Of a stretch of DNA of 64,000 bases, positions 51,211-55,652 are shown piece after piece. The stretch is taken from the IMG/VR virus record IMGVR_UViG_3300013116_000108, positions 1-64,000 of that record. One strand, written 5' to 3'. The first letter of the stretch is position 1. Each line of letters opens with the position of its first letter. Both the position numbers and the translations under genes were made by a program. The notes under the pieces were generated by a model, which was not told the origin of the DNA, made no database searches, and saw only the letters and a program-made list of their open reading frames with translations.

Positions 51211-52251
51211 CTATTCTCTCCATAGTTCGCCGAAATCGAGATCGTCTTTTCTATTAAAGAGATCTTCAATGTTGCTTTGTCTTTCTATATCAAAAGTAAC
51301 ACAATGACTACCACCGTCCCAAAAATATTTGTGTCGCAAAGGACAATGTATTACTTCAATTCCATTTGTATTTAACAATCTTGTAACACTATCGTTTACA
51401 TGACTAGTAATAACAGTCTCAGGATTAATATGTAACATGTTAACTTCAAATGTAGTTTCTTGACTATAACCAATCCAATGTGTTAGATACTGCTTAATAA
51501 AATCTACTGCTTCTTGCTGTGGCTCGTTAACTAACTTAAAACTAAAATCTTCCCATAATCTATGATAACGTTCTAAATCGTTTGGCATATAATGAGGGAG
51601 TTTATGTATTTCCCAACCTTTGAACGTATCAGAATATTGATCTACTTCATAACGTGTTAGTAATAATCCAGGCTTTATAGGACATACACTACTATCACTA
51701 TGTCCCCCAATACTTGCTGTATGTATGTTTACATCTAGATGGACCAACTCTCTATATTTCTTTATCCATTCAACAAATGGCAAGTTTAATTTATTTTCTG
51801 TATCTATTAATAAATCTTTACCTAACCTAAAAACATCACTAGCACAAAAGTAATCAAAAAGTATAACATCATCTTTATATGATGCTAGTGCTTCTTTGCC
51901 ATAATTTTCCCAGGCCCAATTAGCACCAACAAATATTTTATCATGCCAACGTAATAAATGATTTCTTACAGCAAACGGTTGTCCTGGTAATTGTTTACGT
52001 TCTGCTATTGTTTGTTCAGCAAGAGTAAACCCTTCGTTATCCATGTATGTTTTAACGTCTGGTCGTACCACCTTAACACCTTGCGATTTTAATACCGAAC
52101 ACATGTTGTTTAAATCTTCTTGTGTTTCTTCTGTAATTTGTACTAGACAATTTTTTATTTGGGCAGGCAGTCCCTCGTAAACACTTGTAGGTAAAACGTC
52201 ACCCACTAATACTTTAGATAACTCTCCCCAATTATGAAAACAATTTTCCAT
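51211..52251 (-). CDS. Amidinotransferase copy 2
   Basis: WGELSKVLVG, AVRNH, GGHSD, FEVN, GGSHCVTFD. Confidence 0.8.
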   Translation of the reverse strand: MENCFHNWGELSKVLVGDVLPTSVYEGLPAQIKNCLVQITEETQEDLNNMCSVLKSQGVKVVRPDVKTYMDNEGFTLAEQTIAERKQLPGQPFAVRNHLLRWHDKIFVGANWAWENYGKEALASYKDDVILFDYFCASDVFRLGKDLLIDTENKLNLPFVEWIKKYRELVHLDVNIHTASIGGHSDSSVCPIKPGLLLTRYEVDQYSDTFKGWEIHKLPHYMPNDLERYHRLWEDFSFKLVNEPQQEAVDFIKQYLTHWIGYSQETTFEVNMLHINPETVITSHVNDSVTRLLNTNGIEVIHCPLRHKYFWDGGSHCVTFDIERQSNIEDLFNRKDDLDFGELWRE

Positions 52252-53074: not shown

Positions 53075-53983
53075 TTAGAATGAGTATTTAATTCCTAATG
53101 CCATTTGTGTAGTATCAGTACCAGAGTCAACATCAGTTAACTGGTACTCAGCGTATGTTGACAAAGATTCAGATAAGTCACGGCTAACTCCCGCTGTGTA
53201 GTAGTTGCCTGTACCTTCTTTATCTTGTAAACTAACAGCAATCGTGTTTCCAGCGATTGAAGTAGATGCTGAGTATTCAAGACCTGTTAAGTCTGTAGTT
53301 GCTGTATCTTTGTACGAGTATGTACCTGCTAGTGTAATACCAGCAACGTCAATACTTGCAGAAGCAATGTTGTACTTAACAACATTTACTTTGTCATCAA
53401 CCATAGCACCAGAAAGTGCTACTGGACCTACGTCCATTGAAGCAGATACATCAATAACATCAAGACCATCCTTACCTGTAGAACCATCAATTACTGCCAT
53501 AGCATTAATTGTAACTGGGCCTACTGAGTTAGAATATTTTACAGAGTTTGAACTACGGTCAGCATATTTAAATGTGGCGTTTCCACCATAGACGTTAAAT
53601 ATGTTAGTTTTACTAACTCCAGCACCTGGATTTGCTTGTCTACCAGCCGCTACTGAACCTAAAGTACCTGCATCTACACCAACGTATGCTAGTCTAGAGT
53701 CAAATGTATCAGATCCTGAATCATCGGCGTCAACGCCAACCTCTACTTTACCGAATCCAGTAAGACCGCCTTTTTCGTTGCCCTCAGCATCAACTAATGT
53801 TTCGCTAAATTCAACACCGATCTTAGATCCGTTGTTTTGTGCCTTTAAGTGTGCCTTTCCTGTAGAATCATCATCGTTAGAAACCATGTAATTTACAGAA
53901 CCATAAACGTTAACATCAGCAAGTACCGGAGCACTTAAAAATGATAAGCCTAAAGCAACTGTGGCAATTAGTATATTTTTCAT
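53075..53983 (-). CDS. Gram-negative trimeric porin
   Basis: Signal peptide; VNVYGSVN, SKIG, SRLAYVG, GRQ, SVKY; ends LGIKYSF. Confidence 0.9.
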   Translation of the reverse strand: MKNILIATVALGLSFLSAPVLADVNVYGSVNYMVSNDDDSTGKAHLKAQNNGSKIGVEFSETLVDAEGNEKGGLTGFGKVEVGVDADDSGSDTFDSRLAYVGVDAGTLGSVAAGRQANPGAGVSKTNIFNVYGGNATFKYADRSSNSVKYSNSVGPVTINAMAVIDGSTGKDGLDVIDVSASMDVGPVALSGAMVDDKVNVVKYNIASASIDVAGITLAGTYSYKDTATTDLTGLEYSASTSIAGNTIAVSLQDKEGTGNYYTAGVSRDLSESLSTYAEYQLTDVDSGTDTTQMALGIKYSF

Positions 53984-54037
53984 ATTTTTTTCCTTTACAT
54001 ATATGTAAAGACCCTCGCCACTAGAGGCGAGAGCCCT

Positions 54038-54341
54038 CTTCTAGAAGATTTCTGTTGATAGGCATCTTCCAAACCCCGAGCAACTATGCCGCTAAGGCAA
54101 AGTCCTCATGAAACACATTATCGTTTGCGTTTATACGTTTTGTTCGCGTTAACCGAGCTTACATCCGGGCAACTCCACTCTCCTAATAACTACCTGTCGA
54201 TCCTTTTTCAACCCCATCATAAACACATTCATATAATCACACCAAAATCTGTGTTGTTACTTTTGGAATGTGTTTATGGTGGAGTTGCTGGGTACCGCCC
54301 CCAGGTCCAGATTAGCGTTTGAATAACTTCATCGTTACGAC
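54038..54341 (-). ncRNA. ssrA: Circularly permuted two-piece tmRNA; acceptor piece ends CCA at 54277, coding piece starts at 54215; tag ANDNVFHEDFALAA (54128-54084)
   Basis: ...GGCGGTACCCAGCAACTCCACCA precedes GGGGTTGAAAAAGGATCGAC; acceptor GGGGTTG/CAACTCC with G3:U70; 13-bp inverted repeat bounding the intervening segment; outer ends approximate. Confidence 0.93.
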
Positions 54342-54345
54342 ATTA

Positions 54346-54374
54346 TTTATAACATAAAGTAGAAAAAATGTCAA
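54346..54374 (-). promoter_or_regulatory. Composite sigma70 and late promoter for tmRNA
   Basis: TTGACA-N17-TATAAA whose -10 extends to TATAAATA. Confidence 0.8.
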
Positions 54375-54410
54375 GAAAGTGATTTGAAAAAACGAAGGAA
54401 AACATAGGTT

Positions 54411-55652
54411 TTATATGTCGTAATCGGTTTGCTCACCAACTCTGTGTATATCTAATGTGTTACAATGCCAGCCTCCGTCCCAAAAGAAACGATGCCTTAA
54501 TGGAACAAAAATTGGTGTGATGCCTCGTTGTTCTAATTGATCTTTTAAATTTTTATCGTTACTATTAATGACAACGTGCTTTTCGTCTAATACTAAAACG
54601 TTAACATCAAAAATAGTTTCGTCAACTTGTCCGTGCCAATTGTCTAACCATTTGTTAATAAAGTTTTCTAGTTGTGGATTCTCTTCGACTTCCGGTGTCC
54701 AGTAACAACCTTGATTATTATGTCTTAAATTAATTGCTGATTTAACTTCCTTGCCCCAACTTGGTTGATCAAACCAAATAATATCCCAACCTTTAAAAAT
54801 GTCAGCATAAGGTTTGAACCAAGGAGTAGCAATTACTAATCCAGGACGAACTACACTAAACACACTATCGTTATGTCCGCCTATAAAAATTTTATGAAAG
54901 TCAAAGTTTTTGTAATTAGGTTCTAAAAATTCTTCTACTACTTCTGGTGTTTGCCACACATCTACTAAAACTTTATTTCCTAGTCTTGTTAAGTTTGGAG
55001 CACACCACCCATTAAGCGGTGTAGAGTCTTGTAACTTTTCTAACTCGTCCATGTCCTCAACATCAATAGACAAGTGATGTCTCTCTGCCCAACTTTTAAC
55101 GTTTTTAATACTACGTCTAAAGTTAATATTCTTTTCATATATGCTATTATCAACCACAGCATCGCCAAACATTTCTTTATACTTTATAGCAGATAGGTTA
55201 GTACTGTATACATGAGCCTGTGTAATTAATATCTTATCTCCCATTACAAGAGCATCATCTCTTATTGCTAATGGCGGTTGTGGTATTCCTGTACTAGAAT
55301 CGCGTGATAAACGTATATTACGATGGTTTACACCAAAGTTACTTGCTTCTGGAAAGTCTTTTATAGGACTACTAACACCTATTTCACCTGTTTGCCAGTT
55401 AGTGTAGTCTAGTATACTATCTTGGTATCCTAATTCTTTTGGAGTAAGTTGTATTACATCAATGCCGTGGCTTAATAATGTTTGCTTAAAGTATTCAATA
55501 TCTTCTCTTGTTTCTCGAAGTATCTTTGCTAAGCCGTTTTTAATAGTTGTATTTTTAATACCGTCTAAGAAACTATCCTCAAAGACTGACCCTACCATTA
55601 CAGTTTGTAGTGGTTGAAATTCATCCCAAGAATTGACAGTTAACTTTGTCAA
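54411..55652 (-). CDS. Amidinotransferase copy 3
   Basis: VNSWDEFQPLQTVMVG, IRDD, GGHND, FDVN, GGWHCNTLD. Confidence 0.85.
   Translation of the reverse strand: MTKLTVNSWDEFQPLQTVMVGSVFEDSFLDGIKNTTIKNGLAKILRETREDIEYFKQTLLSHGIDVIQLTPKELGYQDSILDYTNWQTGEIGVSSPIKDFPEASNFGVNHRNIRLSRDSSTGIPQPPLAIRDDALVMGDKILITQAHVYSTNLSAIKYKEMFGDAVVDNSIYEKNINFRRSIKNVKSWAERHHLSIDVEDMDELEKLQDSTPLNGWCAPNLTRLGNKVLVDVWQTPEVVEEFLEPNYKNFDFHKIFIGGHNDSVFSVVRPGLVIATPWFKPYADIFKGWDIIWFDQPSWGKEVKSAINLRHNNQGCYWTPEVEENPQLENFINKWLDNWHGQVDETIFDVNVLVLDEKHVVINSNDKNLKDQLEQRGITPIFVPLRHRFFWDGGWHCNTLDIHRVGEQTDYDI

What the first reader, a model, noticed from the sequence alone, without database searches (positions are those of the whole stretch)
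54038..54374. Permuted two-piece tmRNA with a dual early/late promoter
The acceptor piece (ending CCA at 54277) precedes the coding piece (GGGGUUG at 54215). The 61-nt intervening segment is closed by a 13-bp inverted repeat (CATAAACACATTC/GAATGTGTTTATG). The tag ANDNVFHEDFALAA resembles alphaproteobacterial tags. Two-piece tmRNAs are typical of Alphaproteobacteria and some cyanobacteria/betaproteobacteria, so this points to the host. The promoter merges TTGACA-N17-TATAAA with TATAAATA. The ORF track misreads it as a 78-aa antisense ORF.
Basis: partly seen in the sequence, partly recalled or inferred. Interest (0 to 1): 0.7.

Follow-up and report, generated by a model that had tools for sequence, protein, structure and literature searches.

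The report
Phage two-piece tmRNA, early-plus-late promoter
A large marine phage carries its own complete, circularly permuted ribosome-rescue RNA (tmRNA) gene behind a promoter that combines host-type and phage-late signals; such phage tmRNAs were already known, and this one says little about which bacterium the phage infects.

Summary
Window 54041-54374, minus strand, holds a circularly permuted (two-piece) tmRNA gene. ARAGORN gives the tag ANDNVFHEDFALAA. Rfam alpha_tmRNA scores 117 bits (cut-off 50) and tmRNA_permuted 110.6 bits (cut-off 47). Eight syntenic copies show compensatory changes in every tRNA-like helix and an invariant G3:U70 pair.

The window is part of a 204-kb, about 56%-complete marine phage contig related to jumbo phages. 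The promoter TTGACA-N17-TATAAATA is real and conserved: 64 of 82 members of the phage tmRNA clade have it, against 0 of 128 alphaproteobacterial genes. This genome also encodes a gp55-type late sigma factor and uses bare TATAAATA upstream of virion genes, so the dual early/late reading is well supported but not proven.

Metatranscriptome contigs end 8-9 nt inside the predicted RNase P site, which fits processing.

The host inference fails. The gene belongs to a phage-only lineage that includes Melnitz, whose host is not an alphaproteobacterium. Its conserved block matches 100 viral contigs and none of 185,579 prokaryote species genomes.

Phage two-piece tmRNAs were reported in 2022, so this is a new member of a known kind. 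The lineage-wide compound promoter and the nrdB linkage are modest additions.

The parts
54369..54374 (-). -35 box TTGACA of the compound promoter
   Evidence: Read. TTGAC is invariant in 8 syntenic copies. TTGAC[AT] lies exactly 17 nt before TATAAATA in 64 of 82 clade members.
54344..54354 (-). TGT-TATAAATA: extended -10 (TG at 54354-54353, TATAAA at 54351-54346) merged with the T4-type late box TATAAATA (54351-54344)
   Evidence: TGTTATAAATA is invariant in all 8 copies. TATAAATA occurs only 10 times in the 204-kb contig against about 52 expected, and 8 of the 10 are intergenic. A gp55 homologue is present.
54338..54339 (-). Predicted transcription start(s): 54338 by the T4 late rule (box at -13..-6), 54339 by the sigma70 rule. 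Both coincide with the first base of helix 1.
   Evidence: Inference from the geometry in PMC2988020. The Rfam tmRNA_permuted model starts at 54338. The TATAAATA-to-T-arm distance is fixed at 54-57 nt across phage copies.
54277..54338 (-). Acceptor piece (about 62 nt): 5' strands of helices 1-3, T arm (stem 54304-54300 / 54292-54288, loop GGCGGUA), acceptor 3' strand CAACUCC (54287-54281), ACCA (54280-54277)
   Evidence: Rfam alignment. The T stem and helices 1 and 3 are 100% paired with compensatory changes.
54216..54276 (-). Intervening segment removed on maturation (61 nt). Its 13-bp closing stem (54218-54230 / 54266-54278) stacks under the acceptor stem.
   Evidence: In the relatives the stem is 81% paired, with 5 pairs changed on both sides, while length and loop sequence vary.
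54041..54215 (-). Coding piece: acceptor 5' strand GGGGUUG (54215-54209, with G3:U70), GGAUCGAC, 3' strands of helices 3-1 (GUUGC at 54173-54169), small hairpin, tag frame, conserved 3' hairpin with the CAACAGAA loop. The 3' end is approximate.
   Evidence: RNA contigs cover it and end at 54206/54207.
54084..54128 (-). Tag reading frame: resume codon GCA at 54128-54126, 14 codons ANDNVFHEDFALAA, stop UAG at 54086-54084
   Evidence: ARAGORN gives the coding part at 242-286 of the gene. GCAAACGATAAT and GC(C/T)(T/A)TAGCGGCATA(A/G) (A-L/I-A-A-stop) are conserved in the relatives, and the tag variants are conservative.
54007..54038 (-). Terminator-like hairpin (13-bp stem) with a weak U tract
   Evidence: -22.4 kcal/mol, z = -4.0. 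The relatives keep a hairpin here with a different sequence. The strict terminator scan does not call it, and RNA contigs run through it.
53075..53983 (-). Downstream gene for a phage-encoded Gram-negative porin (302 aa, signal peptide, C-terminal ...YSF), on the same RNA contigs as the coding piece
54086..54322 (+). Spurious 78-aa ORF antisense to the tmRNA gene
   Evidence: It overlaps a structurally validated RNA gene on the opposite strand.

Best explanation
This is a functional, phage-encoded, circularly permuted tmRNA (ssrA) gene of the alpha type. It belongs to a phage-borne lineage and lies downstream of nrdAB in a large marine phage related to jumbo phages. Proposed mechanism, with the status of each step: (1) Transcription starts at about G54338 from a compound promoter. 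Early in infection host sigma70 RNA polymerase would use TTGACA, the 17-bp spacer and TGT-TATAAA. Late in infection the phage gp55-type sigma would use the embedded TATAAATA, so the RNA is made throughout infection with the same 5' end (inferred). (2) The roughly 300-nt precursor folds so that helices 1-3 and the 7-bp acceptor stem join the 5' acceptor part to the coding part, with the intervening segment as a hairpin extending the acceptor stem (shown by covariation). (3) Host RNase P cuts 5' of G54215 and host 3' nucleases trim back to CCA at 54277. This releases the 61-nt segment and leaves a ~62-nt acceptor piece base-paired to a ~175-nt coding piece (inferred from bacterial two-piece tmRNAs; RNA contig ends fit the RNase P cut). 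(4) Host AlaRS charges it through G3:U70. With host SmpB and EF-Tu (no SmpB in the 204 kb held) it enters stalled ribosomes, and translation resumes at GCA and adds ANDNVFHEDFALAA, whose ALAA end is a protease degron (inferred). The likely benefit is to keep ribosomes recycling while mRNAs are being degraded during infection. Transcription partly reads through a weak terminator into a phage porin gene.
For: Identity: ARAGORN and two Rfam models well above their cut-offs. Structure: on 8 syntenic copies 88% of cells are paired and 17 pairs change on both sides (reached by 0 of 500 shuffles), slid controls give 35-44%, helices 1, 3, T and acceptor are 100% paired, and G3:U70 is invariant. Selection on the tag: the resume region and the A(L/I)AA-stop end are conserved and the internal changes are conservative. 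Phage gene, not host DNA: it lies between nrdAB/grx and a primase/helicase module in a 204-kb viral record, and the block is syntenic in 7 relatives that hold the tmRNA. Promoter: the genome has sigma70-like TTGAC[AT]-N17-TATAAT sites (22 of 88 intergenic, in a genome that is 5% intergenic) and bare TATAAATA sites, and only the tmRNA merges the two. A gp55 homologue scores E = 1.8e-24. Bare TATAAATA sites precede a baseplate hub, virion and tail-fibre-like genes. The compound motif is in 64 of 82 clade members and 0 of 128 bacterial genes, and also in Melnitz. Expression and processing: in two metatranscriptomes, contigs (about 96-98% identical) cover 53082-54206/54207 and stop there, with an Illumina adapter abutting in X16. 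In those two runs no contig of this phage covers the intervening segment, the acceptor piece, the promoter or the upstream gene. Lineage.
Against: The -10 hexamer TATAAA lacks the T at position 6 that sigma70 normally needs, and the simple sigma70 scan does not call this promoter. The early half therefore rests on the conserved -35 box and the TG extension. No gp33 co-activator was found, though about 44% of the genome is missing. No transcription start, processed end, charging or tagging was measured. The RNA evidence comes from assembled contigs of related strains in one study, ends 8-9 nt short of the predicted site, and cannot detect a 62-nt piece. One contig in X18 spans a relative's intervening segment, which could be precursor or DNA. 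The terminator is weak and is read through, so the 3' end of the coding piece is undefined. The host is unknown.
Confidence: 0.8

Rival explanations
1. The promoter is single-purpose. It is either just a strong host-type promoter whose -10 happens to read TATAAATA, or just a late promoter with a fortuitous upstream TTGACA. The tmRNA would then be made in only one phase of infection.
For: The Melnitz authors read the same element as an early promoter only. TATAAA lacks T at position 6, so the sigma70 scan rejects it, which favours late-only. Late promoters need no -35 element.
Against: Both halves are conserved together at a fixed 17-nt spacing in 64 of 82 phage copies and are invariant in 8 syntenic copies. 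A late-only promoter has no reason to keep TTGACA. An early-only promoter would be expected to read TATAAT, as this genome's other sigma70-like sites do. No bacterial copy has either form (0 of 128).
Confidence: 0.25
2. The RNA is not a rescue factor for the phage's benefit but a decoy or re-targeting device. It would compete with the host tmRNA for SmpB and ribosomes, or attach a different tag so that tagged proteins meet a different fate.
For: A CDS-less mycobacteriophage tmRNA inhibits the endogenous tmRNA (cited in PMC11915505). No phage SmpB is present, so it must share the host's. Phage tags are longer and more varied than bacterial ones, reaching 29-31 aa. Buchholz et al. also suggest selective tagging.
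Against: This gene keeps a full tag frame with the canonical ALAA degron, an intact resume context and full tRNA-like geometry. All of these are conserved among the relatives, as expected for ordinary trans-translation.
Confidence: 0.12
3. It is host DNA: a bacterial ssrA (a common prophage integration site) carried on a prophage end or a chimeric assembly, and so a direct marker of an alphaproteobacterial host.
For: tmRNA genes are frequent attachment sites, and IMG/VR contains prophages. The Rfam best match is the alphaproteobacterial model.
Against: The gene is complete and lies 54 kb into a 204-kb phage contig between phage replication and nucleotide-metabolism genes, with no integrase nearby. 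It carries phage-type promoter signals absent from 128 bacterial genes. It falls in a phage-only clade. Its conserved block is absent from 185,579 species genomes.
Confidence: 0.02
4. It is a decaying relic with no function.
For: No experimental data exist for this gene. Distribution among jumbo relatives is patchy: absent from PA5oct, XaC1 and Atu_ph07.
Against: There are compensatory changes in every helix, the identity elements are invariant, the tag frame is conserved, the promoter is conserved and the RNA appears in metatranscriptomes.
Confidence: 0.02

Closest known systems
ssrA of Methylophilales phage Melnitz and Melnitz-like/pelagimyophage contigs (Buchholz et al. 2022, PMC9004378)
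   Same: Phage-encoded, alpha-type, permuted two-piece tmRNA from marine phages. Same TTGACA-N17-TATAAATA promoter and the same closing stem on the intervening segment, CATAAACAC/GTGTTTATG. Similar tag (ANDNYVPVDYALAA). Same phage-only part of the tree.
   Different: Melnitz is a 141-kb T4-like Kyanoviridae phage, and its ssrA sits next to gp33 and the helicase loader and carries a glutamine riboswitch at its 3' end. Ours is in a phage related to jumbo phages (helicase 40-52% identical to PA5oct, Atu_ph07, Phosso and XaC1). It sits downstream of nrdAB, has no riboswitch and is followed by a porin gene. DNA identity is detectable only over 46 nt.
Bacterial two-piece tmRNA of Alphaproteobacteria (Caulobacter; Keiler, Shapiro and Williams 2000; Rfam RF01849)
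   Same: Permuted gene order, T-arm sequence GGGGGCGGUACCC, GGAUCGAC, a tag starting ANDN, and the 3' hairpin with the CAACAGAA loop. Processing into two base-paired pieces was shown for Caulobacter.
   Different: Bacterial genes lack the phage promoter (0 of 128) and have shorter intervening segments (median 27.5 nt; SAR11 7 nt). They have a 5' hairpin that is missing here and share only 59% (median) identity in the coding piece.
tmRNAs of huge/jumbo phages (Al-Shayeb et al. 2020, PMC7162821; Sinorhizobium phage AP-J-162, PMC11242549; Phosso)
   Same: Large phages that carry translation-rescue genes. Phosso, a helicase relative, has a permuted tmRNA at 113 bits.
   Different: Some huge phages also encode SmpB, and none was found here. 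Phosso's gene has a ~410-nt intervening segment and TTGACT-N18-TAAATA, not TATAAATA.
One-piece tmRNAs of mycobacteriophages and other isolates
   Same: Phage-encoded ssrA.
   Different: Standard, non-permuted gene form. By the Buchholz survey these are mostly non-marine.

Membership tests
Permuted (two-piece) tmRNA, alpha type (Rfam RF01849 / RF04321) | Score above the curated cut-off of the covariance models | tested here: met
   117 bits against 50, and 110.6 bits against 47.
Permuted (two-piece) tmRNA, alpha type (Rfam RF01849 / RF04321) | Gene order permuted: T arm and CCA end come before the GGGG 5' acceptor strand and the tag frame | tested here: met
   CCA ends at 54277, upstream on the minus strand of GGGGUUG at 54215. 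ARAGORN flags it as tmRNA*.
Permuted (two-piece) tmRNA, alpha type (Rfam RF01849 / RF04321) | tRNA-like domain: 7-bp acceptor stem with G3:U70, T arm, and helices joining the two pieces, supported by covariation | tested here: met
   These helices are 100% paired in 7 distinct sequences, 17 pairs change on both sides, and G:U is invariant.
Permuted (two-piece) tmRNA, alpha type (Rfam RF01849 / RF04321) | Tag reading frame with an alanine resume codon and a C-terminal degron (..LAA/..VAA) | tested here: met
   GCA ... ANDNVFHEDFALAA-stop, conserved in the relatives.
Permuted (two-piece) tmRNA, alpha type (Rfam RF01849 / RF04321) | The precursor is cut into two RNAs that stay base-paired | tested here: inconclusive
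   RNA contigs end at 54206/54207, 8-9 nt inside the predicted RNase P site, with an adapter abutting and nothing over the intervening segment in X15 and X16. However, one X18 contig spans a relative's segment, and contigs cannot show a 62-nt piece.
Permuted (two-piece) tmRNA, alpha type (Rfam RF01849 / RF04321) | Alanylation, SmpB binding and trans-translation activity | not testable with these tools
   Needs biochemistry. No phage SmpB in the 204 kb held.
T4-type late promoter (gp55-dependent) | 8-bp TATAAATA box at the -10 position with no -35 requirement | tested here: met
   Box at 54351-54344. Nine other copies in the contig have no -35 box, and 8 of the 10 copies in all are intergenic. 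Definition from PMC2988020.
T4-type late promoter (gp55-dependent) | The phage encodes a gp55-family sigma factor | tested here: met
   phrog_234 match, E = 1.8e-24, in the 307-aa ORF at contig 162562-163485.
T4-type late promoter (gp55-dependent) | gp33 co-activator present | tested here: inconclusive
   phrog_254 was not found, but the search rang nowhere in the controls and about 44% of the genome is missing.
T4-type late promoter (gp55-dependent) | The box drives late (virion) genes, with initiation 6 nt downstream of it | tested here: inconclusive
   The downstream genes are a baseplate hub, virion structural and tail-fibre-like genes. No start-site or timing data.
Sigma70 (early) promoter | -35 TTGACA, 17-bp spacer, -10 TATAAT with A at position 2 and T at position 6 | tested here: inconclusive
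   The -35 box is perfect, the spacer is 17 and a TG extension is present. The -10 is TATAAA (no T at position 6), and the scan tool rejects it. The conserved -35 box argues that it is used.

The most novel reading that the evidence does not exclude
Marine phages maintain their own lineage of alpha-type two-piece tmRNA genes, distinct from every sequenced bacterial ssrA. The lineage would be defined by a compound sigma70/gp55 promoter that fixes the RNA's 5' end at the first paired base, by long intervening hairpins, and by a preferred position downstream of nrdB. It would be passed among unrelated phage groups (T4-like Kyanoviridae and relatives of jumbo phages) regardless of host class. On this reading the tmRNA is expressed through the whole infection cycle, not early only as proposed for Melnitz, and here it is co-transcribed with a phage porin.
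Probability: 0.5. Interest if true: 0.5.

Novelty: new member of a known kind. Interest (0 to 1): 0.33.

Why it matters
Phage-encoded two-piece tmRNAs have been described. This case adds four things. First, the gene also occurs in a marine relative of jumbo phages. Second, the phage copies form their own lineage and so cannot be used to predict a host. Third, they share a promoter that merges host-type and phage-late signals, which implies expression throughout infection and revises the 'early only' inference made for Melnitz. Fourth, they are typically linked to nrdB. Together these give testable statements on how phages keep host ribosomes working during takeover. They also give annotation pipelines a reason not to call the antisense ORF, and not to read the Rfam alpha-model coordinates as RNA ends.

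Tried and rejected
- Glutamine riboswitch (as in Melnitz): nothing near the gene, even at E <= 1. The only extra hits are chance miRNA-like matches to the intervening hairpin.
- Phage SmpB (PF01668): none in the 204 kb.
- gp33 (phrog_254): none, but that search gave no positive control.
- Simple promoter/terminator scan: calls neither element, for stated reasons (-10 lacks T6; weak U tract).
- DNA similarity to isolate phages: only a 46-nt T-arm match to Melnitz.
- Using distant homologues of the 413-aa neighbour to date gain or loss: 46 loci lack a tmRNA within 6 kb, but the homologue sits in a different gene context there, so they are uninformative.
- Folding the intervening segments of relatives: my slices cut off the 5' arms, so those weak z-scores mean nothing. 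The pair counts are the valid test.
- SAR11 as donor or host: tags, intervening lengths and tree position do not match.
- Porin gene as a host marker: it shows only that the host is a diderm, because the nearest clusters are viral.
- Searches were malformed requests and carry no information.
The tree is a quick search with SH-aLRT support only, on about 280 columns.

Full report
**1. What is there**

Reading the minus strand of 54000-54400 gives, in order:
- TTGACA (54374-54369), a 17-nt spacer, and TGT-TATAAATA (54354-54344).
- A 62-nt segment ending GGACCUGGGGGCGGUACCCAGCAACUCCACCA, with its last A at 54277.
- A 61-nt segment (54276-54216).
- GGGGUUGAAAAAGGAUCGAC starting at 54215.
- A reading frame GCA...UAG (54128-54084).
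- A conserved 3' region ending near 54041.
- A 13-bp hairpin (54038-54007).
- The start codon of the next gene at 53983.

ARAGORN calls a permuted tmRNA at 53993-54369 (-) with the tag ANDNVFHEDFALAA. Rfam alpha_tmRNA scores 117 bits against a cut-off of 50, and tmRNA_permuted scores 110.6 bits against 47. The 78-aa plus-strand ORF 54086-54322 is an artefact of ORF listing over an RNA gene. The first ~37 positions of the alpha_tmRNA model are unstructured and align to the promoter, so the Rfam start at 54378 is not an RNA end.

**2. It is a real, constrained RNA gene**

Using the upstream 413-aa gene as a probe, I found 53 related viral loci. The seven closest (86-98% amino-acid identity) all have a permuted tmRNA immediately downstream. 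These relatives share the block nrdB-grx-p110-p413-tmRNA-porin-p249-p346-SNase as far as their contigs extend.

In the 8-sequence alignment (A1) I counted the pairs of the Rfam tRNA-like domain plus the closing stem of the intervening segment:
- 88.3% of cells are paired, and 17 pairs change on both sides. None of 500 shuffles reaches that.
- Controls with the 3' partner slid by 1-3 columns give 35-44% paired.
- Helix 1, helix 3, the T stem and the acceptor stem are each 100% paired. Examples of covariation: acceptor AA/UU, GG/CC, GA/UC; T stem CUGGG/CCCAG, GGCGG/CCGCC, CCCGG/CCGGG.
- The G3:U70 pair, the alanine identity element, is invariant.

The resume region GCAAACGAUAAU and the A(L/I)AA-stop end are conserved. 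The tag variants are conservative: ANDNVFYEDFALAA, ANDNVFNEDYALAA, ..ANDNFANEDFALAA, AKDNVFFEDYAIAA.

The intervening segment varies from 40 to 71 nt and in sequence, but keeps a closing stem (81% paired, 5 compensatory pairs). In the window the acceptor stem plus this stem fold at -33.5 kcal/mol, z = -5.9. The hairpin after the gene changes sequence in each relative but remains a hairpin. In the window it is -22.4 kcal/mol, z = -4.0.

**3. The genome**

The window is bases 1-64000 of a 204,100-bp IMG/VR viral record that CheckV estimates to be 56% complete. G+C is 34.7% and about 95% of the record is coding. It comes from marine or seawater metagenomes.
- Neighbours are nrdA, nrdB, glutaredoxin, a nuclease, a cell-wall hydrolase, a primase and a DnaB-like helicase.
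- The helicase is 40-52% identical to those of jumbo phages PA5oct, Phosso, Atu_ph07 and XaC1. This is a relative of jumbo phages, not a Melnitz-like T4 relative.
- The contig holds only two tRNAs besides the tmRNA and no SmpB.

**4. The promoter**

In this genome TATAAATA occurs 10 times against about 52 expected from base composition. Eight of the ten are intergenic, although only 5% of the genome is intergenic. Nine of these sites have no -35 box. They precede a baseplate-hub gene, several virion structural genes and a tail-fibre-like gene.

A separate class, TTGAC[AT]-N16-18-TAnnn[TA] (mostly N17-TATAAT, often with a TG extension), is also enriched between genes: 22 of 88 matches are intergenic. 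These sites lie in front of replication and other non-structural genes.

The genome encodes a gp55-family late sigma factor (phrog_234, E = 1.8e-24). T4 late promoters are an 8-bp box whose first base is -13, with no -35 element (PMC2988020).

The tmRNA promoter is the only site in the contig where the two classes are merged. The 31-nt pattern occurs once in the window and never in 100 shuffles.

Both reading rules give practically the same start: 54338 for the late rule and 54339 for the sigma70 rule. That is the first paired base of helix 1 and the first position of the tmRNA_permuted model. The 5' end of the acceptor piece would therefore need no processing. This is an inference.

The weak point is that TATAAA lacks the T at position 6, so a strict sigma70 scan does not call the site. 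The argument for sigma70 use is the conservation of the -35 box, which a gp55 promoter does not need.

**5. The promoter is a property of a phage lineage**

A T-arm pattern found at least 119 viral contigs. A block specific to the phage copies (GAGTGGAGTT-N4-GGATGTAAGC-N3-GT) found 100 viral contigs and no match in one genome for each of 185,579 prokaryote species. The same T-arm pattern does find many Alphaproteobacteria, and I added 30 Pelagibacterales genes.

| Measure | Phage copies | Bacterial copies |
|---|---|---|
| Coding-piece identity to ours, median | 68% | 59% |
| Coding-piece identity to ours, maximum | 76% (outside our own clade) | 63% |
| TATAAATA at the fixed position | 67 of 82 | 0 of 128 |
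| Full TTGAC[AT]-N17-TATAAATA | 64 of 82 | 0 of 128 |
| Intervening segment, median length | 61-65 nt | 27.5 nt (alpha sample), 7 nt (SAR11) |

In a maximum-likelihood tree of 247 distinct mature-piece sequences, ours falls in a set of 82 rows that are all phage (SH-aLRT 98), and the set stays phage-only up to 106 rows. The nearest bacterial rows, MAGs labelled Kordiimonas and Emcibacter, are at path distance 1.2-1.3. The nearest unrelated phage is at 0.42.

Melnitz has the identical promoter layout and the same closing stem on its intervening segment. Its authors described only an early promoter and inferred early expression.

Of 100 other loci in the clade, 46 have an NrdB homologue in the fetched flank. 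In all 46 the tmRNA is downstream on the same strand, and in 30 it is within 3 kb. Ours is 1,984 nt downstream. The gene therefore has a preferred neighbourhood and is not inserted at random. The porin and the 413-aa gene are not shared with those loci.

**6. Expression**

Six metatranscriptome runs hold 12-16% of the words of a 3-kb stretch around the gene. Laying four of them (assembled contigs) gave the following:
- In X15 and X16, contigs about 96-98% identical to the window cover the porin gene, the hairpin and the coding piece continuously. They end at 54207 and 54206.
- In X16 the contig runs straight into Illumina adapter sequence, so many cDNA fragments end there.
- In those two runs nothing from this phage covers the intervening segment, the acceptor piece, the promoter or the upstream 413-aa gene. 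This argues against DNA carry-over. One X16 contig does touch the T-arm at 54270-54310, but it runs on into unrelated sequence and belongs to another phage-type tmRNA.
- The end is 8-9 nt inside the predicted RNase P site (G54215). That shortfall is usual for cDNA libraries, which is background knowledge and was not tested here.
- One X18 contig joins a relative's coding 5' region, a different 72-nt intervening segment and the acceptor 3' end. This could be precursor or DNA.

The RNA is therefore made, an end lies where the coding piece should begin, and transcription continues through the weak terminator into the porin gene. Two-piece maturation is likely but not shown.

**7. Host**

The tag starts like alphaproteobacterial tags: 95 of 106 begin ANDN. 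Its ..EDFALAA end is commoner in phage copies (11 of 107) than in bacterial ones (2 of 106). SAR11 tags are 9 aa long (ANNKLALAA and similar).

The downstream gene is a Gram-negative porin of a largely viral family (TM 0.85-0.91), so the host is a diderm. Nothing here identifies its class. Melnitz shows that this cassette works, or is at least maintained, in a phage whose host is not an alphaproteobacterium (PMC9004378).

**8. What is known already**

- Buchholz et al. 2022 reported the Melnitz two-piece ssrA, 53 two-piece tmRNAs among isolate phage genomes (50 of them marine or aquatic), and permuted tmRNAs in 17 of 47 Melnitz-like contigs.
- The 2025 tmRNA database lists 79 phage sequences.
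- Huge phages with tmRNA and SmpB were reported in 2020. Among the jumbo phages nearest to ours, Phosso has a permuted tmRNA, while PA5oct, XaC1 and Atu_ph07 do not.

The finding is therefore a new member of a known kind. What I did not find described in the papers read here:
- the lineage-wide compound promoter;
- the phage-only clade and its absence from bacterial genomes;
- the nrdB linkage;
- the read-through into a porin gene.

**Verdict**

The tmRNA and promoter interpretations are supported, the promoter by comparative evidence only. The host inference is not supported. Interest is modest.

Noticed in passing
window 53075-53983 (-): The gene after the tmRNA encodes a 302-aa Gram-negative porin (signal peptide, C-terminal ...GIKYSF). 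It belongs to clusters that are 89-100% viral (TM 0.85-0.91 to Porin_1/Porin_4 models), and Pfam misses it. It lies on the same metatranscriptome contigs as the tmRNA coding piece, at the highest depth seen (30.9 in X16).
   Followed up: partly
window 54169-54178 and 54279-54288 (minus-strand RNA): GUGGAGUUGC in the coding piece is perfectly complementary over 10 nt to the acceptor 3' strand GCAACUCCAC. Only GUGGAG/CUCCAC is conserved in relatives. GAGUGGAGUU is the block that marks the phage lineage and is absent from bacterial genomes. It could form an alternative pairing in the precursor, or be a protein-binding internal loop.
   Followed up: no
whole contig (G000:C1): TATAAATA is about five times rarer than base composition predicts (10 against about 52) and is almost confined to intergenic DNA, which suggests selection against the late-promoter word inside genes.
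   Followed up: partly
G000:C1:120558-120948 (site at 120662 +): A bare TATAAATA follows a terminator-like hairpin in a 391-nt gap, with no plus-strand ORF downstream for 5.4 kb. This may be an unannotated small RNA or small gene.
   Followed up: no
G000:C1:162562-163485 (-) and 163489-163532 (+): The gp55-like late sigma ORF is 307 aa (T4 gp55 is 185 aa), and only residues matching profile positions 36-147 align. Just beside it, a divergent gene has a sigma70-like promoter (TTGACT-N18-TATAAT) followed 7 nt later by TATAAATA. That is a tandem early-plus-late arrangement, not a merged one.
   Followed up: no
window 54411-55652 (-) and 51211-52251 (-): Two paralogous genes (413 and 346 aa, 25% identical, phrog_25854, function unknown) bracket the tmRNA-porin pair. 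The 346-aa one has a sub-threshold C-terminal match to arginine deiminase (22.3 bits, cut-off 22.8). Homologues occur in many viral contigs in other gene contexts.
   Followed up: partly
loci L038, L055, L065, L075, L306, L307, L310, L336, L365: Some phage tmRNAs of the same lineage encode unusually long tags of 29-31 aa, for example ANDNALSNVTFVDFSAPVTAVNEDFALAA. These end like ours (..NEDFALAA) and repeat a VDFS/FVDF motif.
   Followed up: no
L428 (Sinorhizobium phage Phosso, PV764938.1 349596-350198): The permuted tmRNA has an intervening segment of about 410 nt, far longer than any other seen here. ARAGORN does not detect the gene, but Rfam tmRNA_permuted does (113 bits).
   Followed up: partly
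G000:C1:176399-189427 (+): A single ORF of 4,342 aa lies in the structural-gene region of the contig.
   Followed up: no
L263 (genome contigs): A MAG labelled Bdellovibrionales carries the alpha-type tmRNA T-arm pattern. This could be mis-binning or a transferred gene.
   Followed up: no
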